Positions 4,115 through 34,290 are shown, counted from the first letter of the stretch. The stretch: 36,304 nucleotides of DNA from Fonticula alba ATCC 38817 (GCA_000388065.2 KB932217.1); one strand, 5' to 3'. Notes: generated by a model not told the origin, from the letters alone. Translations and numbers: made by a program.

Positions 4115-7100
4115 ATGACCCCCGACGCCAGCAGGCAGGGCAGCAGGACGCCGGCGGCACCGCCGGCCCTGCTGCTGAGCCTGGGGCCGCTGCTGTTGCT
4201 GGCGGCCCTGCTCGGCGGGGGGGCGGCCCCCGCGCGGGGGCAGGCCCCCACGTCGGATGTCTTCCTGCACGCCACCTGGCATGCGGGGTTCAGGCCGGAG
4301 TCGTTCGGGCCGGCGGTCACCCTGCCCGGGGCGCCGTCCTACCTGGTGGACAACTACCTGCAGAATGGCAACATGTACGTGCAGAATACCTCGCTGAAGG
4401 AGGTGGAGGAGGTCCGCTTCGGCGGGCACTTCACGCGGTATTGGGGCTTCGCCCCGCGGACGACCATCCCGGCCGGGGTGACCCCCCGGTGGATGGGGCT
4501 GGCGCTGGCCGGGCACGACCGCCCGGTGGGGGTCCTGCACTCGGACCAGTGGGCCGTGCTCTTCACCGAGAGGGACCAGCGACACTTCCCGGTGAAGCCG
4601 GTGAGCCTGCTGGCCGGCCGGGCGGTGGCCGCCAACCGGGTGGACCTGCTGGGGCTGGTGGAGCCGCCGGCCGGGCCGCGGGAGGTCCACCTGTGGGAGC
4701 TGACCGAGGCCAGCCTGCTGCGGGTGCCCTTCGGCGTGCCGGTGGCCGGGGGCGAGTCGGCCCACGCGTGCCCCGGGCCCGGCCGGGCATTCTACCTGTC
4801 GGTGGGGCAGACCCTGCAGCATGTGAGCCATGCGGGGGTGGCCGGCGGCCCGGCCAGCGTCCAGGCCATCCCCCTGCCGGCGGGTATGGGGGCCATCCGG
4901 CAGCTGGCCGTCACGCGGCTGGTGGCCGATGCCGGCCACTGCCCCGGGGCCGGGGATGTGGTGCTCCTGCTGGACAGCGACCAGGTGCATGTGATCCCGT
5001 GTGCGGGGGCCGCGGCGCCGGCCGCCGGGCTGCCCTTCACGGCGTCGCTGCCGGCCGCGGCGTCGGCCGCCACCGGGCGCCTGGTCGTCCCGCCGGAGGC
5101 CGCGGCCCTGGACCAGGCGTATGGCTTCCTGTACTTCCTGCAGCCGGGCCCGGGCCCGGCCGGGGCGCCGATGCAGCTGTGGCGGGCCGGGGTCCAGGCC
5201 GGCGGGCTTGCCTGGCGGCGGCTGGTCCTGCCCCCCGGGCACGCGGCGCCCGGGCACCTGCAGCTGGTTCGCCTGCGGCTGAACCGGGCCCAGGACCAGG
5301 TCGGCGAGTGGGCCCTCATGGCCGACAAGGACCTGCTGCTGGAGTCCGAGCGCTTTGGCTGCGACACCGATGGCAGCATCGTGTGTGACGGCCCGGCCGG
5401 GGTGACCGGCTCCGCGCGGGGGTGGGCCTGCGCCCCGGGCCGGGTGCTGTCGCCGTTCGTGGCCCCGGGGCAACTGTGCGCCGACTGCGCCGAAGAGCAC
5501 TACCTCGACCGGCCGGAAGGTGCGCATGGCCCGGCGCGCGGGGCGGGGATGAGGGGGGGCGGGGCGGGGATGAGGGGGGGCGGGGCGGCCGGAGGGGGGC
5601 GGGACCGCTCTGCCGTTCATCGGTGCTGGTGTTCTGGCCGGAGGGGCGGGACCGCTCTGCCGTTCAGCGGTGCTGGTGTTCTGGCCGCAGGGGGGCGGGG
5701 CCGCTCTGCCGTTCAGCGGTGCTGGTGTTCTGGCCGCAGGGAGGGACCGCTTTGCCGTTCATCGGTGCTGACGCTCTGGCCGGGGGGCACACCTTGGCCG
5801 ACAGCCGAGCCGCCCTTCTCCGCGCCCGGCCACACGTGCCGGCCCTGCGCCGACAGCATGTGCCAAGTGTGCGATGCCCATGATTGCCTGGTGTGCAAGG
5901 GGGCGCTGCTGCTGCAGCCGACCGGCCCGGGCGGCGGCATGGCCTGCGTGGGGGCCTGCTCCGGGGGCTTCACCCGGCAGGGGGGTGTCTGCCTGCCGGC
6001 GGCCACGCGCCTGGACGTGGCCCACATGGCGGCCGCCGGGGGGGAGGTCCTGCCGGGGCCGGTGTCGGCGGCCGAGGTGACCGGCATCGGGGCCACCCGG
6101 CTCGGGGTGGACCCGGCCACCGGGCTGCCGGTCATCCCGCCGGTGGGCACCGAGCCGCGGAATGTCCTGCTCTTTGCCGGGGCCGGGGCCGACCCGGTGG
6201 TCATGCGGCTGGAGGACATCGGCCGGCCGGGGAAGCCGGCCCCGGTGCCGGTGCGGCTCTTCACCGCGACCCCCGGGCCGCAGGTGCTGGCCATGACGGA
6301 GCTCGGGCCGATGCTGGACTCGGCCGGCCAGCTGGTCATGGGGATCGTGGTCATGCAGGAGTCCGGCTGGGTGATGGTCACCTGGCTGTCGTGCCAGCCG
6401 CCGGCCCCGGGGGAGGGGTGCACCGTGGCCGGGCCCGGGACGCCGGGCTTCTTCACGTCGCACATGCTGCCGCTGGCCCAGCGCCTGGGCGAGCGCCACT
6501 TCATGCTGATGGACGACTACCTGATGACGTCGATTATTCAGGCGGACCCGGACGCCCGGACGCTGGACTACAATTGGCACCAGGCGTCGGATGTGCTGCC
6601 GGTGCCCGGCGAGTGGGTGGTGCAGGTGCTGGGCAAGAACCATGTCGGGGTCGGGCCCTTGGACTTGGTGGCCCGGGATGACCCGCGGTGGTGGTGGACC
6701 GCCGGCGGGGAGGCCCTGCTGCCGGCGGCCAGCTGGCCGGACGACCAGTACCGGGCGGTTCTCCTCCCCCGGGGCCCGGAGGGGGCCCCCGGCCCGGGGC
6801 CGGAGCTGGTCCTGGTGGAGGACACCGCGGCCCATGCGTGGGATGTCGTCCGGATGCCGGGGAGCCTGGCGCCGGTGGCCGGCACCCGGACGCACGGCGG
6901 GCGGACCGTGCGACAGAGGCTCGGCATGCTGCCGGACCGGCCGCGGCTGGGGGCCGAGGATGCGCCGGACGCGCGGGTCTTCGGGGTCCGGCTGGCCGGC
7001 GGGTCGGCCGAGTACCCGAGCGCCCTGGTGCTGCTGTCGCGCAAGTATGTGGCCGTGTCGGTGCTGTGGTGCCGGCCTGGCGGCCGGGCCGCGGCGTGCG

Positions 7101-7702
7101 TCCTGCTGCCGGCGGTCCGGGCCGACCTGCCGGTGGAGCTCCGACTCCCGAGCACCGGGCCCCTGTGGGCGGAGCCGGTGGTCCACACGCCGGCCGGCCC
7201 GTCGGCCCATGCCCCGGGGCTGCTGGTCAGTGTGCTGACCTACGCCAAGACCATGGGGCCGGTGTATGTGCGGCTGCGGGCCACCTGCCCGCCGGGCACC
7301 GTCGGCCTGGGGTGCCGGGCGTGCGACGCCGGGTGCGCCGAGTGCTGGGCCCCGGCCGACCCGGCGGCCTGCACGGCCTGCCCGCCGGGGCACTTCCTGG
7401 CGGCCGAGGGGGGCACCTGCGCGGGCACCTGCGCGGCCGGCACCATGCCCGGGTCCGGGCCCGACGCCGGGGCATGTGTGCCCTGCCCGCCGGGGACCGC
7501 CGGCCCGGGCTGCCAGCCATGCCACCCGACGTGCATGCTGTGCTCGGCCCCGGGGGATCCGGCGGCCTGCACCGGCTGCCCGCCCGGCCGGCTGATGACC
7601 CCCGGGGGCGCTTGCATGGAGCTGTGCACCGGCGGCACCATGCCCGGGTTCGGAGCCAGCGAGGGCAGCTGCGTGCCCTGCCCGGCCAGCTGCCTCGCCT
7701 AG
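4115..7702 (+). CDS. Paralog A: secreted Cys-rich protein (signal peptide, two unassigned beta-rich domains, furin-like Cys repeats), ~1100 aa; exons 4115-5519, 5805-7702; no TM, no kinase
   Basis: ATG in CACCATG context; hydrophobic leader LLLSLGPLLLLAALLGGGAAPARG|Q. Donor AAG|GTGCGC at 5520; branch GCTGAC 5767-5772; acceptor GACAG at 5804. The phase-1 join YLDRPE|AEPPF matches paralogs B and C. CxxCxxxCxxC repeats from 7286; TAG at 7700-7702. Confidence 0.88.
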   Translation: MTPDASRQGSRTPAAPPALLLSLGPLLLLAALLGGGAAPARGQAPTSDVFLHATWHAGFRPESFGPAVTLPGAPSYLVDNYLQNGNMYVQNTSLKEVEEVRFGGHFTRYWGFAPRTTIPAGVTPRWMGLALAGHDRPVGVLHSDQWAVLFTERDQRHFPVKPVSLLAGRAVAANRVDLLGLVEPPAGPREVHLWELTEASLLRVPFGVPVAGGESAHACPGPGRAFYLSVGQTLQHVSHAGVAGGPASVQAIPLPAGMGAIRQLAVTRLVADAGHCPGAGDVVLLLDSDQVHVIPCAGAAAPAAGLPFTASLPAAASAATGRLVVPPEAAALDQAYGFLYFLQPGPGPAGAPMQLWRAGVQAGGLAWRRLVLPPGHAAPGHLQLVRLRLNRAQDQVGEWALMADKDLLLESERFGCDTDGSIVCDGPAGVTGSARGWACAPGRVLSPFVAPGQLCADCAEEHYLDRPEGAHGPARGAGMRGGGAGMRGGGAAGGGRDRSAVHRCWCSGRRGGTALPFSGAGVLAAGGRGRSAVQRCWCSGRREGPLCRSSVLTLWPGGTPWPTAEPPFSAPGHTCRPCADSMCQVCDAHDCLVCKGALLLQPTGPGGGMACVGACSGGFTRQGGVCLPAATRLDVAHMAAAGGEVLPGPVSAAEVTGIGATRLGVDPATGLPVIPPVGTEPRNVLLFAGAGADPVVMRLEDIGRPGKPAPVPVRLFTATPGPQVLAMTELGPMLDSAGQLVMGIVVMQESGWVMVTWLSCQPPAPGEGCTVAGPGTPGFFTSHMLPLAQRLGERHFMLMDDYLMTSIIQADPDARTLDYNWHQASDVLPVPGEWVVQVLGKNHVGVGPLDLVARDDPRWWWTAGGEALLPAASWPDDQYRAVLLPRGPEGAPGPGPELVLVEDTAAHAWDVVRMPGSLAPVAGTRTHGGRTVRQRLGMLPDRPRLGAEDAPDARVFGVRLAGGSAEYPSALVLLSRKYVAVSVLWCRPGGRAAACVLLPAVRADLPVELRLPSTGPLWAEPVVHTPAGPSAHAPGLLVSVLTYAKTMGPVYVRLRATCPPGTVGLGCRACDAGCAECWAPADPAACTACPPGHFLAAEGGTCAGTCAAGTMPGSGPDAGACVPCPPGTAGPGCQPCHPTCMLCSAPGDPAACTGCPPGRLMTPGGACMELCTGGTMPGFGASEGSCVPCPASCLA
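5520..5804 (+). other. Spliceosomal intron of paralog A (285 nt, phase 1, in-frame and stop-free)
   Basis: GT...AG with a CTGAC branch site. Its translation is repetitive and absent from paralogs B and C, which splice at the same codon. Confidence 0.85.
5597..5785 (+). repeat. Four tandem 46-49 bp units (consensus GGGACCGCTCTGCCGTTCAGCGGTGCTGGTGTTCTGGCCGCAG), preceded by a 2x 21-bp G-rich unit at ~5540-5585
   Basis: Unit anchors at 5604, 5651, 5700 and 5746, read directly. Confidence 0.9.
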
Positions 7703-7795
7703 GCCGGCGACCGGATCGCCCCCGGCGTGCTGCCGGGGCGGAGAGGGCATGTGTGCATAGGCCGCCGCCTGAGACGAGGCCGCGCTGGAGCGAGG

Positions 7796-7816: not shown

Positions 7817-8849
7817 CGAGAACCGTGGGTGCCTTTTGGCTGGCTGTGACCGGGGCGCCGCGGGCCGCCGGAAAGGATGCCGATCCAGCGGGCCCGTGCC
7901 CCACGCCAGGGGGATATGTGGCCACAGGCGGTAGCATGCTGTGGCCGAGCTCGGCGTGTGGTGGCGGCGTGCGGGGGGCATTTCCCGCGCACACGGTGCG
8001 CAGCGGGCACCCCCAGCCAGCCGACGGCCCCCTGCCCGAGAGCGAGAGTGCGCCGCCCGCCGCGCCGGGCCCTGTGGAGTGGCAATAAAACAGGGCGCAA
8101 AAAAAGCGGCAGAGAGGAAGTGCATGCCGGCAAGGCGCCGCCCGCGGGCCCGGATCCGGCGCTGCAAGAAAAAGGCACCACGGGCACGCTTCCCGGCTGG
8201 GAGGCTGGGAGGGGAGGAGGGGTCACAACCGGGCTGGATGGGTGGTGCGGAGGGGGATCCGAGGCGCGGGGTGCGCACACGGGCGGGGCGCGGCCCTCTC
8301 GACGCGCTGGCACGCGTCGGCAGCGTGGCCCAATGTGTCGGGCCGGGGGGGCCCGATCGGGAGTCAGGCGCCGCCAGCGGCGGGTCACATGCGGCCATTG
8401 TGGGGCTGGCTTGGGCGGTGCTTGTGGGTGGCTCGCATGCCCGGCGCCTGCGGGGAGCGATACGCCCGGGGGGGGGGGCCGGCCAGGGGCCGGAGCTTGG
8501 CCGGTGATTTTTGAGTGGTTTTTGGGCGCCAGGTGTGCGCCGGCCATGGGGCCCGGGGGAAAGGGGAATGTCAACTGCGGTGCTCTTCGCACGGGTTTCC
8601 ACACAGGGAGGGAGCTCTGTGACAGAGGGGCGAGCACAAGGTGGAACAACCAAAGGAGCAAGCCATCGTGTTTATTTCCTCGGCACAGGTGGCGCATGCA
8701 CGCATGAGCGAGGGGAGAGGAGCAACCGGGAGGGGACCCGGGCCACGGCCAGGGCGATCTCCCAATGACCTGCCATCCGGAGGGGCACGTTTGTCACGCG
8801 CCCGTGGCCGAAGAGAGGGAGGCGGCAGCCGGCTGGAGGGTGACATTGG

Positions 8850-10727
8850 TCATGATGTGGGGGAAGCACAGCCATCTACCGTCTGGCCGAGGAGCAGGTT
8901 TACCCGGACCGCCCAGCGGCCATCCAGGGCCACCCTGCAATGATCCAGGTCCAGGGGGGCATCGGCCGTCGGGCAGAGGCGGCCCCCTGGGGAGGGGAGG
9001 CGCAGGGCAAAGGCAAAGGCGGCCCGCTTGGACCGGCCACCGCCGAAGGGGTACTCATGGCAGACGAGGAAATCCTCATGGAGCGAGAGAGCCCGCCGGC
9101 CGTGGATCATCAGGCGCTGGGGGTTGATCAGGTTCTCAAAGTCCGGTCCCTGAAGGCAGGGGGGTGAGGAAGGAGGGGCGATCAGGAGAGGGAGCAGAGA
9201 GCGGAGAGGGGGCAGAGAGTGGAGAGGTCAGAGAGGTCAGAGGTCAGAGAGGTCAGAGAGGTCAGAGAGGTCAGAGAGGTCAGAGAGGTCAGAGAGCAAA
9301 GAGAGCAGAGAGCAAAGATAGCAAAGAGAGCAGAGAGCAGAGAGAGGGAGAGAGAGAGAGAGAGAGAGACAAGGTGGGGCTTCGGTCAGGGACCAGAAAC
9401 ACGGTGTGCTAGCGCGCAGAGGCGCCAGGGGAAAGAGCGGCCGGGCAGCGCGCCACGCACATGATAGGCCTCCGGCTTGCAGGCCTCCCGGAAGACCGTG
9501 GCAGTTCCCTTGCGGGGATTGCAGAACACGGTTAGCGGGCCGCCGGCAGGCAGGTTCCGGAAGGGCGAGGCAAGTGACGAGGGAGGGACCGACTCCGGGA
9601 CATCGAAGCGAAAGACGTCGCCATTCATGAAGGACCGGGCTGCCACATCATCCTCGAAGAGGGGCAGGGGGATCTGAATGAAAAAAATGCGGCGGCGGGG
9701 AGTTTCGGGGATCGCGCGCAGAGCAGGGACACCGGCGTGAGTGGAGTGGAAGCAGCAGAGCGCCCCCCTGGCGGCCGGATTCAAAGCCTGCGCGCGGGGA
9801 GAAGCCCAGAGGGCGGCACACGGCCAGGCGCCCAAATGGGCCACGGGAAGGAAGAACAGGGACAAAGGGGGGTCACGTACATGGGCCAGGTCCAGGGGCT
9901 GGGCTGTCGACTGGGCGAGGTTGACCAGGTACCCGGAACGCGTGGCCGAGTCCACCAGCAGGGCCTCGCCAGGGGTGGTGGTCATTTGAAAGGTGGCGCC
10001 CGGGCGGATGCCCCGCTTGAGGATGGTCCCCGTGAGCAGGGCGAGCGGAGCATCCGGCCCCCCGGCGCCCAGCGGGCGGGACCAGTCCACCAGCAAGAGG
10101 CAGCCATTGACGATGACGACCAGGAGCCGGTGGCCATGGGCCGCGAGCATGGCACACGACCGGGCCCCGGCCAGCTGGCATGCCCTGGTGCAGGCGGGCG
10201 TGATGCCTGCCGGGCGGGGGTCTCCCTGCCACCGGTGCCGAGCGAAGGCGCGGATCTTGGTGGTGGTGCTCGGGTGAATGCCAAGACACTGCATGCAGTG
10301 GCTCACCGACGACACCACCGCCATGGTGGAGCCATGCGGGCCTTGGCCCAGGCGGTGGAATGCGAAGTCCACCTGCATGGTGCCCATGTCAATGCGCACC
10401 GTGCCGCGGTGAACGGAAAGGCAACCGACCAGGTCCCTGTCGGTGGTCAGCTGGCGACGATCTTTTCGTTAGCGAACAGTGCGCCCGCCTCCCGGAGCAA
10501 GGGGTGAAGGGCAAAGCAGATGAAGGCAGCACAGCGAGCGGGCGCGCTTGATGTTCCCTGACCAGGGCCACGAGCCAGTCGCCCGGGGAAGCCACTCGCC
10601 CGGGGGGGTAGGCATGGTCATCTGCAGGGGGCCGTGACACACAGGCACACAGGTGGGCCCGGCGGGGATGCGCACACGCCTGGAGCGCACGGCGGAATGG
10701 CGCCGGTGCATGCGCCTCGCCCGACAT
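8850..10727 (-). CDS. Spliced hypothetical protein, ~470-485 aa; exons (minus) ~10727-10563 (tentative), 10450-9461, 9149-8850
   Basis: Long protein-like frame (LAAHGHRLLVVIVNGCLLLVDWSRP...). Donor CAT|GTGCGT at 9460 and acceptor CTTCAG at 9150 join in phase 0 (EAYH|GPDFENLINPQRLMIHG); TGA at 8852-8850. Upstream branch GCTAAC ~10470 and acceptor GCCAG at 10451; donor CTG|GTCAGG at 10562 and ATG at 10727 fit the phase. A further 54-nt in-frame intron (10675-10622) is possible, so the 5' end is uncertain. No family recognised. Confidence 0.7.
9222..9295 (-). repeat. 8x 9-bp tandem repeat (GAGAGGTCA on plus = TGACCTCTC on minus) inside the 311-nt intron 9150-9460, within a long purine (plus) / pyrimidine (minus) tract ~9185-9370
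   Basis: GGTCA at 9226, 9235, 9242, 9251, 9260, 9269, 9278 and 9287. Confidence 0.92.
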
Positions 10728-12873: not shown

Positions 12874-15800
12874 ATGGCGGTCGGCAGTGCCCTCGGCCTG
12901 GTGGCCGGCCTGCTGGCATGGATGCTGACCATGCCGGTGGAGCTGGCCCGCGGCCAGATGCCCCCGCCCTCGGGGCTGCCGAACATCTACCTCCACCGGT
13001 CCATGGGGTCCCTCATGCGGGGCACGGGCCGGGTGGATGTGGTCACCGCGCCGGGGCAGGCCTCGGTGACGTTCAAGCTGAATGGCCCGACAACGATGGA
13101 GATCTACGACCAGCGGGACGCGCTGGACATCCTGCCGGACTACCGGGTCGGGTCCTTCTTCGGGCCGGTGCCGCGAGAGACGCTGGAGTGCCCGCGAAGT
13201 GGCGTCGACCCGGCCAGCACCAGCATCATGGCTTTGCCGGTGACCGGGAGCCCGACCCCGGCCCTGGTGCAGCATACCGACCAGTGGGTGGCGCTGTTTG
13301 AGTCGCCGATGGAACACCCGCTGCCGGGGCCGGCCACGCAACTGCTGCGCGGCCTGGCCGCGGCCGTGGACGATGTGGACCTGGTCGGGGTGACGGACAT
13401 CCCGGGCCAGTCGCGGCAGGGGGAGCTGTTCCTCGGCCGGCTGACGTCGGCCGGGCTGGCCGTGCGGCCGGTCGGCATGACGGTGGCCCTGCCGGTGCTC
13501 ACGGCCACCGGGACCCGGCGGCACTTCTACGTGGCCGAGTCGGACGCCCTGCACAGCATCGCCCTGCAGGAGGACGGCACGGCCGTGGTGGATACCATGC
13601 TGCTGTCGGACACCGTCATCAGCATGGTGACCACGCGGCTGGTGTCGACGGTGGCCCAGTGCCCGGACCATGCGGACGTGGTGCTGGCCACGGCCGACGG
13701 CCGGCTGAGGGTCTTCCCCTGCCACGGGGGCAGCCAGCCCGGGCCCGAGCTCGAGGGCGAGGTGCCGGAGTGGCAGCTCTGGGTGCAGGACAGCCTGGTG
13801 GCCGTGGGGCCGGCCTCGCTGGACCAACTGTCCGGGTTCTTCCTCTACCAGTCCCCCGGGCAGGATGGCTTCGACCGGCCATACGTTTGGCGGGTGAGCG
13901 TCAGCCCGGATGGGGGGGACCTGCTCTGGCAGTGGATGGTCATCAGCGGCGGCACCGAGGTGAGACGGAATGCGCTGGGCAAGTTCCGGACATCGGAGAC
14001 CGGGCTCTCGGACTGGCTGATGGTGAGCTACAACCAGGTGTACTTCGACTCGGCCACCTTTCAGTGCTCCACCGATGAGAGCATCATTTGCGACGGGCCG
14101 AGCTACACCGACACATTCGGGGCCTTCGACTGCATCGAGGGCCATGGCGTGTCGTACTTTGCCCGGCCCGACCAGATATGCGGTGGCTGTGGCCCTCGCT
14201 GGTATTTGGACCGTCCGCCAGGTGCGCGCTGTCCCCCGGGGGGGGGGGGGAGCTGCTGGACGTGTGTGTGTGTGTGTGCCCGGCTCGGCGTGGGTCTGGC
14301 GGCTGAGGGATGCTAACGAGCGAGACACGGTGTGGCGCGTCGTCGACGGGCCGACCCCGGGGGCCGGCTCGGGCGCCGGGGCGGGGGTGCTGCACGAAAA
14401 AACACACATACGGAAAAAAAAAACCAGGCGAGCCGCCATTCAGCCAGCCCGAGCACGAGTGCAAGCGCTGCGACGAGGACAGCTGCTGGACCTGCAATCG
14501 CCAGGGCTGCCTGGTGTGCGATAGTACACGGATTCCGGAGTACAGCGGCCCCGGCGGCCGGGTGGTCTGCCGGCAGGGCGGCTGCTCGCCGGGGTTCCAC
14601 CTGGTGGCCGGGGTGTGCCAGGCCGAAGGGCCGGCCCTGCCGGTCATGCGCATCAGCCCGCCGGAGGTGGAGACCCTGCCCGGGCTGGACCCGGGCATCC
14701 CGGTGACGGCGCTGGCGGCCACGCGGCTGACCGTGGACCCGGTGTCCGGGGGGCCGGTGGTACCGGCGGTCGGAGGCACCGGGACCGACCCGGGCATGGT
14801 GCTCCTGCTGCAGGCCGGGCCCCAGGCCCGGGCATGGCTCATGCCCAATGGGGCCATCGGCCAGCCGGGCAAGGCCCCGCTGCAGCCGGTGGCCCTCCTG
14901 AGCGGCCCGCTGCCGGCGGATGTGGTGGCCGTGGCCGAGGTCGGGCCCTTCCTGGAGGATGGCGGCCAGCTGCTGCTGGGGCTGGCGCTGTGCGACCGCC
15001 AGGGCACCGTGTATGAGGCGTGGCTGGAGTGCACGTCCGGGCAGGCGGACGGGTCGGCGCCATGTGCGGCCGCCGGCGGCCCGGCCGTCCTGACGCCCCT
15101 GCTGCAGGGCACCGGCTGTGTGGACCTCCAGGTCCAGGCGACCACCGGCCGGCATGTGGTCATGCTGTCGGACCAGGCCCAGGGGGCGGCCCTGCTGGAG
15201 GCCGATCCGGCCGGCCGGCGGCTGCTGGCCACCCGGGTGCCGATGGATGGCATGGTGGTGCTGCCGGGGCCCGGGGGCCCGGATGGCCGCGTGGCCGACC
15301 CGGCCGTGGGCGACTGGCTGGTGGGCACCAGCGCCGGGGACCTGCCCTCGGCCATGCCCACGCGCTTGCCGGTGTGGGATTCCCGGTGGAGCTACCTGGT
15401 GGGCCGGTTCATTCGGGGCGTTGCCACCTGGCCGGATGTGCTGGTGCCGGTGGTCCTGCCGGCCGGCGGGGGCTTCCCGCTGGAGCTGGTGTTCGTGTCC
15501 ACGAAGGAGGACCAGTGGCGGGTGGTTCGCGCGCCGGGCGAAATGCAGCCCACCGGCGCGACCATGTGGCTGGCATCCAGCATGCAGGTTTTGATGGAGA
15601 CCCTGCCCCTGCCGGTGCCGCAGCTGCCGGTCAGCACGCTGAATGTCCGGGCCCAGGGGCTGCACATCCCCGGGTCGGCCACATACCCGAGTGCCTTGCT
15701 GCTGCAGGCGCACACCATGCTCGGGGTGTCGCTGCTCCGGTGCCCGGGCGACCGGGTCCTGTGCAGCTTCCTGCCGGCCGTGGTGCTGGAGCTGCCGGCG

Positions 15801-16643
15801 GCATTCCAGGTGCCCTCCGACAAGCGGCTTTGGCAGGTGGCCATCCCGCGGGCAGGTGGCCCGGCTCCCGGGCCCGGGGCCGAGGGCACCGTGCCGGTCG
15901 TCTCGCTGCTGGGCTTTTCCGAGGCCACCGGGCCGGTGCATGTGCGCCTGGGGGCCGACTGCCCGGCCGGCACCTTCGGGCCGGCCTGCGAGCCATGCCA
16001 CCCGGACTGCCAGCAGGCGTGCACCGGCCCCGGGCCCGGGGATTGCGTCTGCGCCTTCTGGCTGCCGGAGGACCCGGCCGTGTGTCTGGCGGCCTGCCCG
16101 GCCGGGACCTACAGCGACTGGGGCGCCTGCCGGGGCTGCCATGCGTCGTGCGCCGAGTGCACCGGGCCCGAGGCCGGGGCGTGCACCGCATGCGCGCCGG
16201 GGCTCGTGCTGGAGGATGGCCACTGTGTGGTGGCCTGTGGGGCCGGGGAGTATGCGTGTGCCTCCGCGTGCCTGCCCTGCCCGGGAGAGTGCGCCAGCTG
16301 CGAGGCGGCCAGCGGCAGCGGCCCGGGCTGCGAGGCCGTGTGCACCGGCTGCAAGCCGGGCTTTGTCCTGGTGGGCGACGAGTGTGTGGCGGAGGTCTGC
16401 CCGGTGGGGGAGTTCCTGCCGCCGGGCTCGGACACGTGCGCCCAGTGCCACTGCACCTGCCGGGCATGCGCCGGCGGCGCCGAGCCCGACAAGTGCACCT
16501 CCTGTCCGAAGGGCTTCCACCTGTCGGAGGAGGGCCGGTGCCGGGTGTCCTGCCTGCCGGGGGGCCTGTGCCCCGGCCGCGTGGCCGAGGTGCTGCTGGT
16601 GCATCTACTTTGCTGGGCTCGGAAGTTCGGCGGCGGCCACTGA
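12874..16643 (+). CDS. Paralog B: secreted Cys-rich protein, same architecture as A, ~1187 aa; exons 12874-14221, 14428-16643; no convincing TM, no kinase
   Basis: Leader MAVGSALGLVAGLLAWMLTMPVELARG|Q. Donor CAG|GTGCGC at 14222; branch GCTAAC 14312-14317; acceptor ACCAG at 14427. The phase-1 join YLDRPP|GEPPF aligns with A and C. Furin-like repeats from 15960; TGA at 16641-16643. Confidence 0.88.
14222..14427 (+). other. Spliceosomal intron of paralog B (206 nt, phase 1)
   Basis: GT...AG; the frame switch between ORFs 12874 and 14310 is resolved exactly by this intron. Confidence 0.88.
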
Positions 16644-22817: not shown

Positions 22818-25800
22818 ATGGCCGGTTTGCCGGCACTGGCCCAGTGGCCGGCCTTGGCCGCGGTGCTCCTGGTGCTCGGCATGCTGGCATGCTCGCGCGC
22901 GCAGGACATCCACCTCCATGCCGCGCGGCAGCCGATCCTGAGCAGGCCCGAGCCGGTGTCCCTCATTTTGGCGCCCGGTGGCGACATGTTTGCCATGGTC
23001 CGCGAGAGTAATGTAGCCTTCTGGTTTGGCATGCTCGTCGATGCGGGCTTCTACATGAGGGAGCACCGGTGGGGCTTGTACTTGCTGGACCACGGCCTGG
23101 GCCTTACCTCGGGGGATCCCAACAACCCCGGCACCGCGGCCATCATGGTCCCCCGGGGGTTCAGCCCGTACCATGGCAACCTCCTGGAGCACACCCTCGA
23201 TGGGGTGGGCTTCTTCGGGGACCCGCCCCCCTATGCGTTTCGCTTGCCGGGCGTCCGGCTGCTGGCCGGATCGTCCAGCCTACTTAGCGCGAACTTCCTC
23301 GGGCTGAGGCAGGACCCCGGCCCGGGGCAGGTGGTGTACCTGGGGGCGCTTGACATCCTCATGGTCGAGGACATCGAACACAACATGCCCCCGGTGGTGG
23401 GGAATGCCCTGGCCATTGCGGCCTCCCGGGGGGCGTTCTTCCTGATCGACGACATGCACCTGCAGCATGTGTCCTTCATCGGCCAGGGCCCGGCCACGGT
23501 CAAGCACATCGCCAGCCCGGGCAGGGCGCTCCAGCTGGAGGTGGCGGTCTTCCCCGAGGCGCTGGCCGAATGCCCGAGCGTGGACGAGGCGGTGCTGGTG
23601 CTGCTGGACACCGGCCGGGTGTGGGTGTGCACCTGCTTTGGCAGCCCCGAGCAGCGGATCATCCCCGGCGGGGACCTGCCGGCCGGGGTGCCGGTGGCCG
23701 GGGCCCGGCTGATCACCCTCCCGACCGGCAGCCCGACAGGCATCCGGCCGCCGGTGTACCTGTCGGCCGCCGGGGCGAGTGACGCGCGCAACCGGCTCTG
23801 GCAGGTGACCCTGGTCCATGGGGCGGTCCAGTGGCGCCGGGTGGTTCTCCCCCCGGCGGTGGCCCATGTGTCCGGCATGCAGCTGGCCCTCAGCAGGACG
23901 GCATACGGCCGGGCCCACTGGGTCTTGGCCGACGCCGAAATGCGGGTTCTCTTCGACGCCGATGCCTTCCACTGTGCCACCGACTCGAGCATTGTCTGCG
24001 ACCGGGAGGGGCTGTCCACCGGGTCGCCTCTCGGGTGGACCTGCGTCGCGGGTCACGTCGAGGCGCCGCTGGTGTCGGAGACGGTCCTGTGCGCCGGGTG
24101 CGCCGAGGGCCACTATCTACACCGGCCTGATGGTATGTGTTTTCGTGTTTTCGTGTTTTCGTGTTTTCGTGCTTGCGTGTATGCGTAGCTGTGTGTGTGC
24201 GCGTAGCTGTGTGCGCGTAGCTGTGTGCGCGTAGCTGTGTGCGCGTAGCTGTGTGCGCGTAGCTGTGTGCGCGTAGCTGTGTGCGCGTAGCTGTGTGTGT
24301 GTGTCTCTCTGGGGCTATTTGTGCCTGTGGGTGTGTATCTTTGTGTGTGTGCTCGCGTGTTCAAGGCACCTCGACAGGCTTTTGTCTGGCTCTTCTCTCG
24401 CCCCAGTCGGCCAGGCAACTGACCCGCGGAGGACATCGCCCCAGGGGAGGCGCCCTTTGCCCAGCCGGAGCACGAGTGCCGGCCATGCGCGCAGGCGGGC
24501 TGCCGGACGTGCGACCAGGACCACTGTCTGGTGTGCGCGGAGGGCATGCTGCTGGAGCCGAGCGGCCCGGCCGGCCGGACCGTCTGCGTGGCGTCCTGCT
24601 CGGCCGGCTTCCGGCCGGTGTCCGGCATGTGCCTTCCGAGCGGTGGCACCCTGCCGGGCATCGGCCTGACGGTGCCGGTGGCGGCCAGTCTCCTGGCCGG
24701 GCTGGGCCCCGGCGACCGGGTCACCGCCATCGGCCCGACGTGGCTGTCGGTGGACGCGGCCTCCGGCGTGGCCATCCTGCCGGCCAGCGCCAGCGGCCCG
24801 GCCACGGGGGTGCTCCTTTTCACGGAGCACCTCAAGTCCTACATCCTGCCGGCCGAGGCCGTCGGGGCCCCGGGGGCGCATGCGGCGGCGGAGGTCCGCC
24901 TGCTGAGCGAGGACCTCGCCAGCCCGGTGGTGGGCTTCGTCGACGCCGGGTCCTCCCGTCGGGATGGGCAGCTCTTCCATGGCCTGGTCATGGTGGGCCG
25001 GGATGGCCAGGCCCAGCTGGCCAGGCTGACGTGCCCGGGCTCGGGGGCATGCCATGCCGGCGAGCTGGACTCGCCGAAGTTCCTGCTCGACAACTGCTCC
25101 AACAGGGTTCGGCGGTTGGGCCATTTGGCGATCGCCCTAGACCGGCCCCGGGAAGGGGTCCTGGTGGTGTACCTGAGTGGCCTGCTGGACCGTTGGTCGG
25201 TGCATGCCTTCTCCGCCGCCGAGCTGGTGGTGCTCGATATGTATGACAGGGTCCGGCGCGCCGAAAGCCACACTGGCACCTGGATGCTGCTGCCGACCGA
25301 GGCCGGCAATGCCAGCCTCTCGCCGGATTCGGCTTTCGGGGCGTACCCGGCGGGCTTGCCGCCGTTAGCCGGGCGCTTCTTGGCCGACTCGCTGGCGCCC
25401 GGCCGGGGCTTTGTGCCGGTGATGCTGGCCCGCGGGCCCGGGGCCCGGGTGTCGGGGGAGCTGCTCTTCACCGGGACCGTCGGCACGGCGTGGCATGTGG
25501 TCCATGTGCCCGGGGACATGGTGCCGGCCGGGCGATCGACCGGCCTGCCCTCCAGCCGCCATGCCATCGGCACCTTCCCCCGGGCATTGGAGCCCCCGGC
25601 CGGGGGGGGGGGCGCACCACGATGCCCTGTTCCAGGCGGTGGCCCTGCCGGCTGGCGGCCCGCGGTACCCCAGCGCGCTGCTGCTGCTGTCGCGCACGTT
25701 CGTCGGGCTGTCGGTGCTCCACTGCCCGGGCGGGCCGGCCGGGGCGTGCGCCCTGCTGCCGGCGGTCTTTGCGGACCTGCCGGCGGAGCTGCGGCCGCCG

Positions 25801-28800
25801 GCCGGCACGGCCCTCTGGACCCCGGCGGCGGTGGATTTCGCGCCGGCCGGCGGTGTGTCCGCGCGGTCGCCCGGCTCGGGGTGGCAGATCGATTTCCTGA
25901 CCATCGCGCCGGCCACCGGGCCGGTGGCCTTTTCGCTGGTGCTCAGCTGCCCGGCCGGGTCATATGGGCCCATGTGCGATGGGTGCCATCCCACGTGCGC
26001 GGCCTGCGCCAGCCCGGAAGAGCCGGAGCACTGCACCGCATGCGCCCCCGGCCGGGCGTGGCTCCATGGCCGGACGTGCGTGAGCGAGTGCCCGGCCGGC
26101 ATGTGGCCCGATGGACCGGCGTGCCGGGCCTGCCCGGGCGAGTGTGCGACCTGCACCTCGGCCGCCGCCTGCACCGGGTGCGTGGCCGGGCGCTTCCTGT
26201 CGGGCACGCACGCGTGCGAGCCGTGCGACGGGTCGTGTGCCCGGTGCACCGACGACCGGAGCTGTGACGCTTGCCGGCCGGGGTTGGTCTTTGCCGGGGT
26301 CGACCCGGGGGTGCCCTCGCGCTGCACGTTGGCCTGCCCGCCGGGCGAGTTCGCCGGGCCCGCCAGGTGCACTTCGTGCGGGCCTTCCTGCGACCTGTGC
26401 GCCGGCGGGGCGGCATCGTGCACCGTGTGCGCCGAGGGCTTCCGCTGGGCGAGCCAGCCGGGCCCCGGGGGCGCTGGCCCGTGCGTGCCCTGCGACCCGG
26501 GGTGTGTGTCCTGCACGGCGGACCGGTGCCTGGTCTGTGGGCAGGGGCTGCTTCTTGGGCCGGATGGGGCATGTGTGGGCTCCTGCCCGGACGGGTGGTG
26601 GCCCAACGGCGAGTCGTGCCAGCCGTGCGATGTCAGCTGCGGGACCTGCTCCGGCGGCGATGCCGCGCAGTGCACCGGGTGCGGGACCGGGCTGGATCTC
26701 GTGGCGGCCGGCCCCGGCGCGGTGGGGGCCTGTGTGTCCGGCTGCCCGGAGGGCGAGTACCGGGACCTTGGGTCGATGGCGTGCCGGGCCTGCGACGCGG
26801 CGTGCGCCACGTGCAACGGCCCGACCGATCGGGACTGCTGGCGGTGCAGGGAGGCCCTGCTGCAGGATGGCGACTGCGTGCAGGCCTGCGCCGCCCGGCA
26901 TGTGGCCCTTGCCGGGCGGTGCCTGCCCTGCCATGTGTCGTGCGACGCGTGTGCCGGGACCCGGAGCACCGAGTGCCTGGAGTGCGCCGACGACCTGCTG
27001 GGCCTGCCGGCCGGGCAGGCGCCGGCCCGGTGTGTGCCCGCCTGCCCGGCCGGGTACAGCCCCTCGGCCGGCGGGTGCGCCGCCTGCCCGGCCCACTGCG
27101 CCAGCTGCCCGGGGCTGAGCACCGTGTGCGGCCTGTGCCAGCGGGGGTGGCTGCTGGCCCGGCCGGACTGCGTGCAAAGCTGCCCGGAGGGAACCTCGTC
27201 GCTGGGCAGCGAGTGCTTCTCTTGCCACGAGGGCTGCGGCAGCTGCTTTGGGCCGGGGCCCGACCAGTGCCTGTCCTGCCCTGGGCAGGGGCTGGTCCTG
27301 GTGGCCGGCCGCTGCCTGGCCGACTGCCCGGCCGGCATGTTCCCGGACCGGGGCACCTGCACCCCCTGCAGCGACACGTGCGCCGCGTGCACCGGGCCCA
27401 CGGACAGCGAGTGCACCCGCTGCACCGGGGATAGGGCGCTGCTGCGGGGCACCTGCCGGGCCGGCTGCCCGGGGCGCTTTTTCCCCGCGGACAATGTGTG
27501 CCTTCCGTGCGGGGCCCGTTGCGCCAGCTGCCAGGACGCGAGTGGCTGCACCGGCTGCGAGGAGGGGCTCATGCTGCGGCCGGATGGCGGCTGCGCCGCC
27601 GGCTGCCCAGCCCGGTCGGCCGAGTGCCCGGCCCGGGCCCGGTGCGTCCCCTGCTCGGGGGAGTGCGCCGCGTGCGAGGCCTTCGGCCCGGGGTGCGAGG
27701 CCTCCTGCACGCGCTGCGAGCCGGGGCATGTTCTGTCGGGCGGCGCGTGCCATGTTGCCTGCCCGGCGGGGGAGTTCCTGCCGGCCGGTGGGCACGCCTG
27801 CGAGCCGTGCTCGGCGGCGTGCCGGACATGCTTTGGCGCGGCGGGCCAGTGTACCGGCTGCAATGGTGGCCTCCTGCACCCGGGCGAGGGCATGTGCGCG
27901 TCGGCCTGCGCCGGGGCGTCGGCCCCGGTGGCCGGCGTCTGCCTGAGCTGCTTGGCCGGGTGCGAGCATTGCGAGGCCGGGCCCGGCCAGCCGGAGTGCA
28001 CGGTCCAGGCGGCTGGCCAGCTGGTCTGTCCGGAGGTTGCATCCTGTAGCCGCTGCGCCCCGGGCCGGCTGCTACTGCCGGGCCGGACGGCCTGTGTGGA
28101 GGTCTGCCCGGCCGGGCACTTCGCCGATGCGGACGGCCAGCCGGCCGTGTGCGCCCCCTGCCATGCGAGCTGCACCGATTCCTGCACCGGCCCCGAGGAG
28201 GGTGACTGTGTCTCATCCTCCAGACCCAAGTCCTCGCGCGTGGGCCTGGCCGTGGGCCTGTCGGTGGGCCTGCTGCTGCTGCTGATCCTGCTGGTACTGC
28301 TGGTGCTGTTCCTCGTGCGCCGGCGCCGCGGGCAGGCCACCGCGAAGGCGCCGGCCGACGACGAGGACGCCACCGAGCTGAACACCATTGTGGAGCTGGC
28401 CCTGCCCGGGGCCATCCTGGTGGACGTGGCGGTGGACTTCCGGCCGCTGGACGAGACCCTCGGCGCCGGGACCCAAGCGAGTGTCTACGCGGCGCAGGCG
28501 GTCGGGGCCGGGATCGTGGCCCGGCTGGGCTGCCCGGAGGTGGTGGCCGTGAAGAAGATGCGCATCGAGGCCATGCAGCCGGTGCACCATGCCCTCTTCC
28601 AGAATGAGGTGGCGCTGATGTGGCTGCTGCGCGAGCATGGCCACATCGTCCGGCTGTTCGGGTACAGCGCCCGGCCGCCGGCCATCGTGCTGGAACGCTT
28701 CGACGGTGACCTGGATACGCTGCTGCACTCGGAGGTCCCGCTGTCGGACCTGCAGCTGGCGGACATCTGCCAGCAGTGGGCCGCCGGGCTGGAGGCCATG

Positions 28801-29316
28801 CACGCGCACGGGGTGGCCCACTGCGACCTGAAGCCGGGCAATGTGTTTGTCAGCCGGACGGCCGCTTCCTGGCGGGCGGCCCTCGGGGACCTGGGCACGT
28901 CGAAGAACCTGAGCGCCGACCGGTCGTCGGCCCTGCTGAGCGCCTTCCCGGAGCTGAATGCCATGTCGGTGCCGTATGCCGGGCCGGAGGTCCTCCAAGC
29001 CTTCCGGCGGAGCGCGCCCCTGGACCGGGGGCACTTCTTCCCGGCCGATGTGTACAGCGCCTCGGTCATGCTCTACGAGTGTCTGACGCGCGCGGCCCCC
29101 TGGCCGGGCATGGATGCTGGCCAGATCACGGCCGCGGTGCTTGGAGGCTCTCGGCCGCGTGTGGCCGGCCTGCCGGGGGCCGGGCCGCTGGCGGCGGCGC
29201 GCGACCTCATCGAGGCCGGCTGGCAGGCGGAGCCCGGTCGGCGGCCTCCAGCGGCCACCGTCCGCCAGCGGTGCGCTGCGCTGTTTGTCTCGGCCAGTGG
29301 CTTGGCTCTCTCTTGA
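22818..29316 (+). CDS. Paralog C: single-pass receptor Ser/Thr (TKL-like) kinase with furin-like Cys-rich stalk, ~2061 aa if the frameshift is corrected; exons 22818-24132, 24445-29316; one extra G in the run at 25602-25612
   Basis: Leader MAGLPALAQWPALAAVLLVLGMLACSRA|Q. Donor ATG|GTATGT at 24133; branch ACTGAC ~24418; acceptor CCCAG at 24444 (YLHRPD|GEAPF). Cys repeats 25948-28210; TM 28240-28317 followed by RRRR; kinase motifs GAGTQA, VAVKK, HCDLKPGN, DLG, GPE, DVYS; TGA at 29314-29316. Spliced length is 6187 nt (3n+1), consistent with one surplus base. Confidence 0.9.
24133..24444 (+). other. Spliceosomal intron of paralog C (312 nt, phase 1)
   Basis: GTATGT...CCCAG at the same codon position as the introns of A and B. 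Confidence 0.9.
24183..24300. repeat. 8x 14-bp repeat (GCGTAGCTGTGTGC), plus 3x 9-bp TTTTCGTGT at ~24140-24168, inside the paralog C intron
   Basis: GTAGCTG at 24185, 24203, 24217, 24231, 24245, 24259, 24273 and 24287. Confidence 0.93.
25948..28210 (+). other. Furin-like / growth-factor-receptor Cys-rich repeat array (roughly 15 units)
   Basis: Recurrent CxxC(H/D)xxCxxCxGPxxxxCxxC...C...CPxG pattern. Repeat count estimated by eye. Confidence 0.85.
28240..28317 (+). other. Transmembrane helix of paralog C
   Basis: VGLAVGLSVGLLLLLILLVLLVLFLV followed by RRRR (positive-inside rule). Confidence 0.92.
28447..29290 (+). other. Protein kinase domain, Ser/Thr type (LKPxN), TKL-like, non-RD
   Basis: Gly loop at 28462, VAVK at 28543-28554, HCDLKPGN at 28819-28842, DLG at 28888-28896, GPE at 28981-28989. 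Confidence 0.93.
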
Positions 29317-34131: not shown

Positions 34132-34290
34132 GTGCGTGTGTGTTTGTGCGCGTATGTACGCTTATGTACACTTATGTACACTTATGTGCGCTTATGTGCG
34201 CTTATGTGCGCGTATGTGCGCGTATGTGCGCGTATGTGCGCGTATGTGCGCGTATGTGCGCGTATGTGCGCGTATGTGCGCGTGTGTACG
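34078..34290. repeat. (TG)n microsatellite (34078-34126) followed by 14 tandem 10-bp units (34151-34290; CGTATGTGCG and variants)
   Basis: The units fall in register with the 10-base print blocks. Confidence 0.95.

What the first reader, a model, noticed from the sequence alone, without database searches (positions are those of the whole stretch)
28819..28842. The receptor kinase is non-RD, with the HCDLKPxN loop typical of pattern-recognition receptor kinases
Seen: the catalytic loop is HCDLKPGN; the catalytic Lys (VAVK), alphaC Glu (QNEV) and Asp residues are retained, but DFG is DLG, APE is GPE and the Gly loop is GAGTQA. Established: kinases lacking the Arg before the catalytic Asp are enriched among innate-immune receptors, and plant LRR-XII receptors such as FLS2, EFR and XA21 have Cys at that position. 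Inference: a probable protist has independently paired an unrelated large ectodomain with a CD-type kinase, hinting at microbe sensing. The changes could instead reflect a weak or decaying kinase.
Basis: partly seen in the sequence, partly recalled or inferred. Interest (0 to 1): 0.75.

Follow-up and report, generated by a model that had tools for sequence, protein, structure and literature searches.

The report
Non-RD receptor kinase family in Fonticula
The kinase end of this giant surface receptor of the bacteria-eating amoeba Fonticula alba does carry Cys instead of the usual Arg before its catalytic Asp. This is an inherited trait of most of an 80-copy, species-only receptor family and not a private defect, and whether it has anything to do with sensing microbes is untested.

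Summary

The gene is Fonticula alba "TKL protein kinase" (2023 aa). It has a signal peptide, two unassigned head modules, a 730-aa CxxC stalk, a transmembrane segment and a kinase.

HCD is not private to this copy. Of 81 family catalytic loops in the genome, 47 are HCD, 28 HRD and 5 HGD. The family holds 47 of the genome's 52 HCD loops.

On a rooted tree, Cys is the inferred ancestral state of the core family. It derives from HRD/DFG relatives in the same genome, DFG then became DLG, and the HRD copies (mostly one array) are reversions.

All catalytic residues are invariant across copies, and omega against the sister copy is 0.41. A decaying kinase domain is therefore not supported.

The family is Fonticula-only. 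It is nearest to RAF (TKL), not to plant RLK or IRAK, so the likeness to plant receptors is convergent. A microbe-sensing role remains speculation.

One caveat applies to this copy. Its frame shifts by one base in a G11 run (25602-25612), which the public gene model hides as an intron. This is either an assembly error or a recent break.

This scan had already found the family on other DNA of this genome.

The parts
22818..24134 (+). Exon 1: signal peptide and first head module (aa 1-439 of the public model P0001)
   Evidence: tblastn of P0001 to the window is 100% identical. The exon ends at a GTATGT donor. No Pfam family matches. The single-sequence AF2 model is all-beta but poor, pLDDT 39.6.
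24135..24444 (+). Intron 1, 310 nt, GT...AG, with a CTGAC branch-like motif about 25 nt before the AG. It holds an 8-bp repeat and a 14-bp minisatellite (24194-24297).
   Evidence: Sequence read. Tandem repeats. GC is flat across codon phases (0.54-0.60), against a coding GC3 of 0.91.
24445..25601 (+). Coding stretch in the exon-2 frame: a short CxxC linker and the second head module. The public model ends this exon at 25520.
   Evidence: Paralogues P0038, P0005, P0009, P0008 and P0003 align to residues 383-385 of this 385-codon frame, well past the annotated exon end at codon 358. GC3 of 25521-25601 is 0.88.
25602..25612 (+). G11 homopolymer where the reading frame shifts by one base. The public model hides it inside a 115-nt 'intron' (25521-25635).
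   Evidence: Sequence read. The 'intron' encodes residues homologous to paralogues on both sides of the run. It has no branch-like motif and has coding-type GC3.
25613..29316 (+). Coding stretch in the exon-3 frame: end of head 2, Cys-rich stalk, transmembrane segment, kinase and stop codon
   Evidence: ORF 25495..29316. tblastn of P0001 is 99.9% identical.
25975..28164 (+). Cys-rich stalk of about 730 aa. The whole protein has 50 CxxC motifs.
   Evidence: Pfam gives weak VSP and GF_recep_IV matches. CxxC motifs counted.
28240..28317 (+). Transmembrane segment (aa 1666-1691), followed by an RRRR stop-transfer
   Evidence: Hydrophobic run located in P0001 and mapped to the window.
28447..29268 (+). 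Protein kinase domain (aa 1735-2008)
   Evidence: Pfam Pkinase and PK_Tyr_Ser-Thr. The AF2 model has a C-lobe pLDDT of about 90. The best solved matches are B-Raf and C-Raf.
28462..28485 (+). Gly-rich loop G-A-G-T-Q-A-S-V (a GxGxxAxV form)
   Evidence: Read. G25, G27, Q29, A30 and V32 are invariant in 21 copies.
28552..28554 (+). beta3 Lys (VAVK)
   Evidence: Aligned to the B-Raf VAVK Lys. Invariant in 38 of 38 copies.
28606..28608 (+). alphaC Glu (QNEV)
   Evidence: Aligned to B-Raf FKNEV. Invariant in 38 of 38 copies.
28819..28842 (+). Catalytic loop HCDLKPGN. The non-RD Cys codon TGC is at 28822-28824.
   Evidence: Translation; codon. H, D and N are invariant and K is in 37 of 38 copies. 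The x position is C in 24, R in 11 and G in 3 of 38 fully aligned copies.
28888..28896 (+). DLG in place of DFG
   Evidence: Aligned to B-Raf DFG. DLG is in 46 of 49 core members, while distant Fonticula relatives and outsiders are mostly DFG.
28981..28989 (+). GPE in place of APE
   Evidence: Read. P and E are invariant. Gly at this position is in only 5 of 49 core members, including the sister copy.

Best explanation
The site is the catalytic loop of one member of a Fonticula alba-only family of about 80 giant type-I receptor Ser/Thr kinases with a TKL-like (RAF-like) kinase domain.

The Cys before the catalytic Asp is an inherited family character. On a rooted tree it arose once, from HRD/DFG receptor-kinase relatives in the same genome, at the base of the core family. 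DFG then became DLG.

Cys has been kept in about 58% of copies. About 35% have gone back to Arg, mainly in one tandem array on contig 10. About 6% have Gly. No other residue is seen among the 80 family loops that could be typed.

Every residue needed for phosphotransfer is invariant: the beta3 Lys, alphaC Glu, catalytic Asp and Asn, the DLG Asp, the APE Glu, and its Arg partner in the C-terminal lobe (the invariant R285).

Inferred, not shown: the domain is a working kinase whose switching does not rely on the Arg-phosphate clamp of RD kinases. It would be turned on by ligand-driven clustering of the ectodomains, possibly with help from RD paralogues.

The likeness to plant FLS2, EFR and XA21 is convergent.

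This particular copy carries a one-base frame shift in a G11 run between the heads and the stalk. It is either a homopolymer assembly error or a very recent break.
For: Motifs: confirmed.

Identity: 100% match to a 2023-aa Fonticula alba 'TKL protein kinase'.

Family size and states:
- 81 intervals in the genome cover the catalytic loop.
- Pattern counts give HCD 52, H[R/S]D 107 and HGD 5 out of 183 HxDxKxxN sites.
- 47 of the 52 HCD sites lie in family intervals, against 5 of 104 elsewhere (Fisher p = 2e-16).
- Annotated family proteins give 26 C, 12 R and 3 G.

Ancestry:
- The Fonticula clade has SH-aLRT 99.
- Basal relatives are HRD+DFG, P0154 is HCD+DFG, and P0153, P0155 and the core are HCD+DLG.
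- Fitch parsimony puts Cys at the roots of the 54-, 52-, 50- and 16-tip clades that hold the target.

Constraint:
- Catalytic residues are invariant while only 42 of 221 columns are.
- Omega is 0.41 (95% CI 0.28-0.59) against the sister copy.
- The target departs at 1 of 57 positions that are invariant in all other copies. The dead copy L025 departs at 10 of 56.

Affinity:
- B-Raf and C-Raf are the best solved matches by sequence (E 1e-16; profile 1.5e-22) and by fold.
- Every profile-search hit at 35% identity or more whose source was looked up or already known is Fonticula.
Against:
- The backbone of the rooted tree has only moderate support (SH-aLRT 80-92), and earlier notes of this scan report gene conversion among copies, which I did not test. 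The number and direction of C/R changes are therefore uncertain.
- Revertant Arg codons are mostly CGG, two steps from TGC. This fits spread by duplication or conversion better than many independent point changes.
- Omega of 0.3-0.6 is high for a kinase. On the target's own branch the counts (14 synonymous, 30 non-synonymous) cannot exclude relaxed selection.
- The N-lobe of the AF2 model has low confidence.
- TKL placement rests on best hits and the public annotation, not on a reference phylogeny.
- The frame break upstream may mean that this copy is not expressed as a receptor.
Confidence: 0.75

Rival explanations
1. Decay: the odd motifs (HCD, DLG, GPE, GxGxxA) mark a weak or dying kinase, and this gene is a pseudogene.
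For: - The reading frame shifts by one base in a G11 run at 25602-25612.
- The public 'intron' that bridges it is really coding sequence.
- On the target's own branch, non-synonymous to synonymous counts are 30:14, which cannot be told from neutral.
- The family does contain dead members: L025/P0025 has HGDLSPAN and HLG, and P0152 has HCHFGPDK and DLA.
Against: - HCD, DLG and the Gly loop are shared by dozens of copies with all catalytic residues invariant.
- The target departs at only 1 of 57 otherwise invariant positions (M101L), against 10 of 56 for the dead copy.
- Pairwise omega is 0.41, with no bootstrap replicate at or above 1.
- Both frames stay open for about 385 and 1227 codons, with GC3 of 0.9.
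- A G11 run in 75% GC DNA is a classic place for an assembly error (my own knowledge).
Confidence: 0.2
2. Neutral wobble: the residue before the catalytic Asp is simply unconstrained in this family, so HCD carries no functional meaning.
For: - The site switches among C, R and G at least 9 times on the 50-copy tree, with at least 3 switches forced by well-supported branches.
- Sister pairs differ at the site: L023 is C and L047 is R; L005 is C and L008 is G.
- The activation segment is nearly the same in HCD and HRD copies, and no column tracks the state beyond lineage effects.
- The states cluster by tandem array.
Against: - Only C, R and G occur among the 80 family loops that could be typed. 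Ser, Tyr, Phe and Trp are also one step from TGC but are absent.
- Cys persists from relatives at 41-44% identity through to the target.
- C and G are the same two replacements that typify plant non-RD kinases (PMC10943584, citing Dardick and Ronald 2006).
- GC-biased mutation could explain part of this restriction.
Confidence: 0.3
3. Convergent pattern-recognition system: HCD and HGD copies are ligand-binding receptors for bacterial (prey) or kin cues with low intrinsic activity. They signal through HRD paralogues acting as co-receptors, as FLS2 and EFR do with BAK1.
For: - The family holds both non-RD and RD members with matching activation loops.
- Non-RD kinases are linked to innate immune receptors, have low activity, and work in RD/non-RD complexes in plants (PMC8463890, PMC10943584).
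- Fonticula alba is a bacterivore whose germination and collective invasion depend on the state of the bacteria (PMC9097593).
- The HCD state is strongly concentrated in this receptor family.
Against: - There is no ligand, expression or interaction evidence.
- HRD copies have equally giant, variable ectodomains, with lengths of 1700-2200 aa.
- HRD copies lie together in their own array rather than paired with HCD genes.
- The non-RD/immunity link is a correlation within one kinase clade (RLK/Pelle-IRAK), and this family does not appear to belong to that clade.
Confidence: 0.12

Closest known systems
Plant LRR-XII pattern-recognition receptor kinases (FLS2, EFR, XA21)
   Same: - Type-I receptor with a Ser/Thr-type DLKPxN catalytic loop and Cys in place of the HRD Arg. 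EFR has Cys848 (PMC8463890).
- A large, lineage-specific, tandemly arrayed family.
- C and G are the usual replacements for the Arg (PMC10943584).
   Different: - The ectodomain has no LRR. It has two unassigned heads on a CxxC stalk.
- The kinase is nearest to RAF, not to RLK/Pelle-IRAK.
- HCD arose within a Fonticula-only clade from HRD relatives.
- It has DLG instead of DFG.
- A third of the family is RD.
RAF kinases and the TKL group
   Same: RAF is the best match among solved structures, by sequence (26-30% identity, E 1e-16 to 1e-22) and by fold. The public annotation also names these proteins 'TKL protein kinase'.
   Different: RAFs are cytoplasmic RD kinases with DFG and canonical activation-loop phosphosites. 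This protein is a transmembrane receptor with HCD and DLG and an activation segment about 9 residues longer, counting DFG/DLG to APE against PKA numbering from memory (the alignment to B-Raf shows only 4 extra residues).
Entamoeba histolytica transmembrane kinases (for example PATMK/TMK96)
   Same: An amoebal family of type-I receptors with a signal peptide, a CXXC-repeat ectodomain, one membrane span and an intracellular kinase. One member acts in phagocytosis (PMC2211552).
   Different: - Homology was not tested here, and no named Entamoeba protein turned up among the 30 hits whose sources were looked up.
- The Fonticula proteins carry two extra head modules of about 400 aa and are about 2000 aa long.
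- PATMK lacks a conserved Gly-rich loop (PMC2211552), whereas this family keeps GxG.
TGF-beta type I receptor Ser/Thr kinases (TKL group)
   Same: Receptor Ser/Thr kinases of the TKL group that, from my own knowledge, naturally carry DLG in place of DFG and are active. DLG alone therefore does not argue for a dead kinase.
   Different: They are RD kinases (from my own knowledge) with small three-finger ectodomains and a GS box. None of this was compared here for lack of reference sequences.

Membership tests
Eukaryotic protein kinase, catalytically competent type | beta3 Lys, alphaC Glu, catalytic Asp and Asn of HxDxxxxN, metal-binding Asp of DFG, and the APE Glu with its Arg partner | tested here: met
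   All are present in the target and invariant in 38 of 38 or 37 of 38 copies. The alignment to B-Raf fixes their identity. Pfam Pkinase scores 1.4e-27.
Eukaryotic protein kinase, catalytically competent type | Measured ATP binding and phosphotransfer | not testable with these tools
   This needs recombinant protein.
Non-RD kinases (Dardick and Ronald sense) | No Arg immediately before the catalytic Asp of subdomain VIb | tested here: met
   HCD, with codon TGC, at 28819-28827.
Non-RD kinases (Dardick and Ronald sense) | Activity independent of activation-loop phosphorylation, or low intrinsic activity | not testable with these tools
   Sequence alone gives only this: the activation segment is the same in HCD and HRD paralogues.
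RLK/Pelle-IRAK family, LRR-XII subfamily | Kinase domain groups with IRAK/Pelle/RLK kinases | tested here: inconclusive
   The best 60 solved matches by sequence are all B-Raf or C-Raf. The fold matches are RAF, Src-family, Fes and RIPK1. No plant RLK was seen among the 30 exhaustive-search hits whose sources were looked up. No reference tree could be built.
RLK/Pelle-IRAK family, LRR-XII subfamily | Leucine-rich-repeat ectodomain | tested here: not met
   No LRR family in Pfam. Only VSP and GF_recep_IV Cys-rich repeats match.
TKL group | Closest similarity to TKL kinases, and placement in a kinome tree | tested here: inconclusive
   RAF is the best match by sequence and fold, and the public name is TKL. 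A kinome tree was not built.
Fonticula alba giant receptor-kinase family (found earlier in this scan) | Signal peptide, two head modules, CxxC stalk, one membrane span and a C-terminal kinase, clustering with the family | tested here: met
   Architecture. The kinase is 55-85% identical to 20 paralogues. It sits inside a 16-tip clade with SH-aLRT 99. The beta-propeller fold of the heads was not confirmed, because the model was poor.
Pseudokinase | Loss of at least one of the beta3 Lys, the catalytic Asp or the DFG Asp | tested here: not met
   All three are present. Contrast L025/P0025 and P0152, which have lost them.

The most novel reading that the evidence does not exclude
A close relative of fungi independently built a two-tier receptor-kinase system like that of plant immunity. 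Non-RD (Cys or Gly) members would bind ligand, and RD revertants would act as signalling partners, for sensing bacterial prey or kin during aggregation. In that case the same Arg-to-Cys/Gly solution evolved twice for surface surveillance.
Probability: 0.1. Interest if true: 0.8.

Novelty: new variant of a known kind. Interest (0 to 1): 0.5.

Why it matters
Non-RD receptor kinases are known mainly from one kinase clade, plant RLKs and animal IRAK and RIP kinases. There the missing Arg correlates with innate immune recognition, and nobody knows why.

This is a second, independent origin in a RAF-like kinase, on a different ectodomain, in a bacterivorous amoeba next to fungi. It has the same Cys and Gly replacements and natural RD revertants within one family.

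That gives a ready-made comparative system. Matched HCD, HGD and HRD paralogues can test what the Arg loss does to kinase regulation, and whether the immune link is causal or an accident of descent.

No paper found here describes the family, although this scan had already flagged it on other windows.

Tried and rejected
I did not try another route. The rest were typed by DNA-pattern counts, which print only the 24-base match.
- Word-index protein searches, both the kinase region inside the long protein and the domain alone: outside Fonticula they returned only GC-rich bacterial kinases and one unnamed transcriptome protein at 28% identity. This was no help for classification.
- Naming outsiders from the exhaustive search: most are unnamed metagenome proteins.
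- A kinome tree with TKL, IRAK and RLK references: no reference sequences were available by id, and I did not type any from memory.
- Fold of head 1: the single-sequence AF2 model was poor (pLDDT 39.6), the Atlas gave only a 0.83 lead to ephrin-receptor-like Cys domains, and the two heads show no mutual similarity. The propeller claim of earlier notes is therefore neither confirmed nor refuted here.
- Search for activation-loop changes that track the R/C state: only lineage-linked differences were found, for example Thr or Ala at query position 181.
- Dardick and Ronald 2006 is not held, so it is cited second-hand through PMC10943584 and PMC8463890.
The two frames were analysed separately by reference, and the public model P0001 was used by id.

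Full report
**Observation.** Window 28819-28842 (+) translates to HCDLKPGN. It lies in a 1273-codon open frame, 25495-29316. Pfam reads a protein kinase domain there (Pkinase 1.4e-27; PK_Tyr_Ser-Thr 2e-21), preceded by Cys-rich VSP / growth-factor-receptor-like repeats. The HMMER alignment to B-Raf fixes the other motifs:
- VAVK aligns with the B-Raf VAVK Lys.
- QNEV aligns with FKNEV.
- HCDLKPGN aligns with HRDLKSNN.
- GDLG aligns with GDFG.
- YAGPE aligns with WMAPE.

**Organism and gene.**
- The window is 72-76% GC. It is contig 17:308228-344531 of a 31.3-Mb, 214-contig assembly.
- The kinase region is 100% identical to a 2023-aa NCBI protein, 'TKL protein kinase [Fonticula alba]' (P0001).
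- Mapping P0001 to the window gives the following parts:
  - exon 1, 22818-24134: signal peptide and head 1
  - a 310-nt GT-AG intron
  - a second coding block from 24445: CxxC linker and head 2
  - a third coding block to 29316: CxxC stalk, transmembrane segment at aa 1666-1691, and kinase at aa 1735-2008
- The protein has 50 CxxC motifs and 154 Cys.
- No Pfam family covers the first 900 residues or so.

**Is HCD private?** No.
- A six-frame search of the genome with the kinase domain finds 137 exon-level matches. 81 of them cover the catalytic loop.
They hold 52 catalytic loops: 32 Cys, 17 Arg and 3 Gly.
- To type the rest without fetching letters, I counted DNA patterns for H-x-D-x-K-x-x-N in the genome:
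  - 183 sites in all (reversed control 3)
  - 52 HCD (control 0)
  - 107 with an MGN codon, which is Arg plus at least 4 Ser
  - 5 HGD
- Matching these coordinates to the 81 family intervals gives 47 HCD, 28 HRD, 5 HGD (one of them the dead copy L025) and 1 untyped.
- Outside the family, only 5 of 104 sites are HCD (Fisher p = 2e-16).
- Annotated family proteins agree: 26 C, 12 R, 3 G.
- The target's sister copy (L002, 85% identical, SH-aLRT 97) and its wider 16-tip clade (SH-aLRT 99; 12 C, 3 G, 1 R) are non-RD.

**Direction of change.**
- A profile of 21 paralogous kinase domains (A1) was run against 1.84 billion representatives.
- Every hit at 35% identity or more to the target whose source was looked up or already known is Fonticula alba. 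The nearest outsiders, at about 28-31% identity, are unnamed metagenome proteins, an Amoeboaphelidium protein and a starfish protein.
- In a tree of 88 kinase domains, built with the HxD column removed, the 63 Fonticula sequences form one clade (SH-aLRT 99).
  - Its basal branches are HRD, HQD or HLD with DFG.
  - Next comes P0154, with HCD and DFG.
  - Then come P0153 and P0155 and the core family, with HCD and DLG.
- Fitch parsimony assigns Cys to the roots of the 54-, 52-, 50- and 16-tip clades that contain the target.
- The simplest history is therefore HRD/DFG, then HCD/DFG, then HCD/DLG, with later returns to Arg and several changes to Gly. The returns to Arg include 15 of the 20 copies in the contig-10 array.
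- Two cautions apply. Backbone support is 80-92. Earlier notes of this scan report gene conversion among copies, which I did not test.
- Arg codons are nearly all CGG (16 of 17 sampled), two steps from TGC. This suggests that one or a few reversions spread by duplication or conversion.

**Is the kinase decaying?** The domain shows no sign of it.
- Across 38 fully aligned copies, only 42 of 221 columns are invariant. They include the beta3 Lys, alphaC Glu, the His, Asp and Asn of the catalytic loop, the Gly of DLG, the Pro-Glu of APE and the subdomain IX Asp. The Asp of DLG fails only in the dead copy (37 of 38). The subdomain XI Arg is invariant in the 21-copy set.
- DLG (46 of 49 core members) and the GxGxxAxV loop are family traits. 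From my own knowledge, DLG occurs in active TGF-beta type I receptors.
- Only GPE is uncommon, at 5 of 49.
- Nei-Gojobori omega for the kinase is 0.41 against the sister copy (bootstrap 95% interval 0.28-0.59; no replicate at or above 1). Against other close copies it is 0.36-0.41. A GC3 of 0.90 probably inflates these values.
- The target departs at 1 of 57 positions that are invariant in all other copies (M101L). The truly dead member L025 (HGDLSPAN, HLG) departs at 10 of 56.
- On the target's own branch the counts (14 synonymous, 30 non-synonymous) are too few to exclude recent relaxation.

**A caveat specific to this copy.**
- An earlier first-reader note on this window pointed to a G11 run.
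- The public model removes 25521-25635 as a 115-nt intron.
- That stretch has coding-type GC3 (0.88) and lacks the CTGAC branch-like motif seen in intron 1.
- It encodes residues that align with six paralogues on both sides of the run. For example, P0009 residue 835 aligns just before the run and residue 837 just after it.
- The 'intron' is therefore coding sequence, and the frame slips by one base within 25602-25612.
- This is either a homopolymer assembly error or a very recent frameshift, which would cut the heads off from the stalk, membrane span and kinase. I could not resolve which.
- I analysed the two frames separately and did not join or repair them.

**What kind of kinase?**
- B-Raf and C-Raf fill the best 60 solved-structure matches, for the single sequence (E 1e-16) and for the family profile (1.5e-22).
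- A family-alignment AF2 model (mean pLDDT 73, C-lobe about 90, N-lobe poor) matches RAF, Src-family, Fes, RIPK1 and insulin-receptor kinases.
- The DLKPxN loop and the Ser/Thr before the APE-proximal Tyr are Ser/Thr-kinase features.
- Suga et al. found no tyrosine kinases in Fonticula (PMC4342544).
- I could not build a tree with IRAK/Pelle/RLK references. Membership of that clade is therefore 'not supported', not excluded.

**How it probably works (inference).**
- It is a type-I receptor whose variable heads bind an unknown ligand. Clustering brings the kinase domains together.
- Without the HRD Arg, the domain cannot use the Arg-phosphate clamp that orders the activation loop in RD kinases.
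- In plants such kinases have low intrinsic activity and act with RD co-receptors, sometimes without needing their own catalysis (PMC8463890, PMC10943584).
- The family offers both states, with nearly identical activation segments of the form GDLGTSRNLSxDRSSALVxxxPELNAMTxRYAAPE. Heteromeric signalling is therefore conceivable.
- Against that idea, RD copies have equally large ectodomains and sit together in one array rather than beside HCD genes.
- The restriction of this site to C, R and G among the 80 loops that could be typed argues against pure neutrality. It mirrors the 'cysteine or glycine' rule of plant non-RD kinases (PMC10943584).

**Comparison and novelty.**
- The architecture most resembles the Entamoeba CXXC transmembrane kinases (PMC2211552). 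The catalytic-loop state resembles plant LRR-XII receptors. The kinase sequence resembles RAF. It is a member of none of these by the tests I could run.
- Full-text searches found no paper describing Fonticula receptor kinases or their non-RD state. The 2022 study of bacteria-dependent collective behaviour does not mention kinases or receptors.
- This scan had already reported the family several times on other windows of the genome, and had noted HCD and DLG in passing.
- This report adds the genome-wide tally, the polarity of the change, the evidence of constraint, and the hidden frameshift.

**Verdict.** I rate it a new variant of a known kind, with interest 0.5.

Noticed in passing
window 25521-25635 (G11 run at 25602-25612): The 115-nt 'intron 2' of the public gene model is really coding sequence. 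Paralogues align straight through it, and the frame slips by one base in the G11 run. This is either an assembly homopolymer error or a recent frameshift.
   Followed up: yes
window about 4538-7741 (+) and about 13207-16580 (+): Two further paralogous genes lie upstream on the same strand. Each encodes two heads and the start of a CxxC stalk, 24-35% identical to this receptor. Neither has a kinase match anywhere in the window. They may be kinase-less receptor-like or secreted paralogues, or their later exons were not traced.
   Followed up: partly
L025 (G000:C10:361580-362518) = P0025; also P0152: Two catalytically dead family members. P0025 has HGDLSPAN and HLG (the DLK Lys and the DLG Asp are lost, and the Gly loop is replaced by an acidic run). 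P0152 has HCHFGPDK and DLA.
   Followed up: partly
window 24135-24444: Intron 1 holds an 8-bp repeat (GTGTTTTC, 5.5 copies) and a perfect 14-bp minisatellite (TGTGTGCGCGTAGC, 7.4 copies, at 24194-24297). A related 10-bp array (TGTGCGCGTA, 14 copies) lies at 34145-34287.
   Followed up: no
G000 contig 10, about 261-575 kb: A tandem array of 20 family kinases, of which 15 are HRD, nearly all with the codon CGG. Arrays on contigs 5 and 9 are mostly HCD or HGD, so the RD state clusters by array.
   Followed up: partly
G000:C2:141141, C4:1856222, C6:1059240, C12:591927, C17:81560: Five HCD catalytic loops lie outside the family intervals.
   Followed up: no
window 9185-9369 and 8001-10000: A purine-rich AG/GAGAGGTCA repeat block sits in a stretch with lower GC (0.675) and strong positive GC and AT skew. 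It was not explained.
   Followed up: no
P0250 (Amoeboaphelidium protococcarum, 869 aa): An aphelid protein with an HCDIKSAN kinase, 30% identical to the target, is among the nearest named outsiders. It groups with other outsiders, not with the Fonticula clade.
   Followed up: partly
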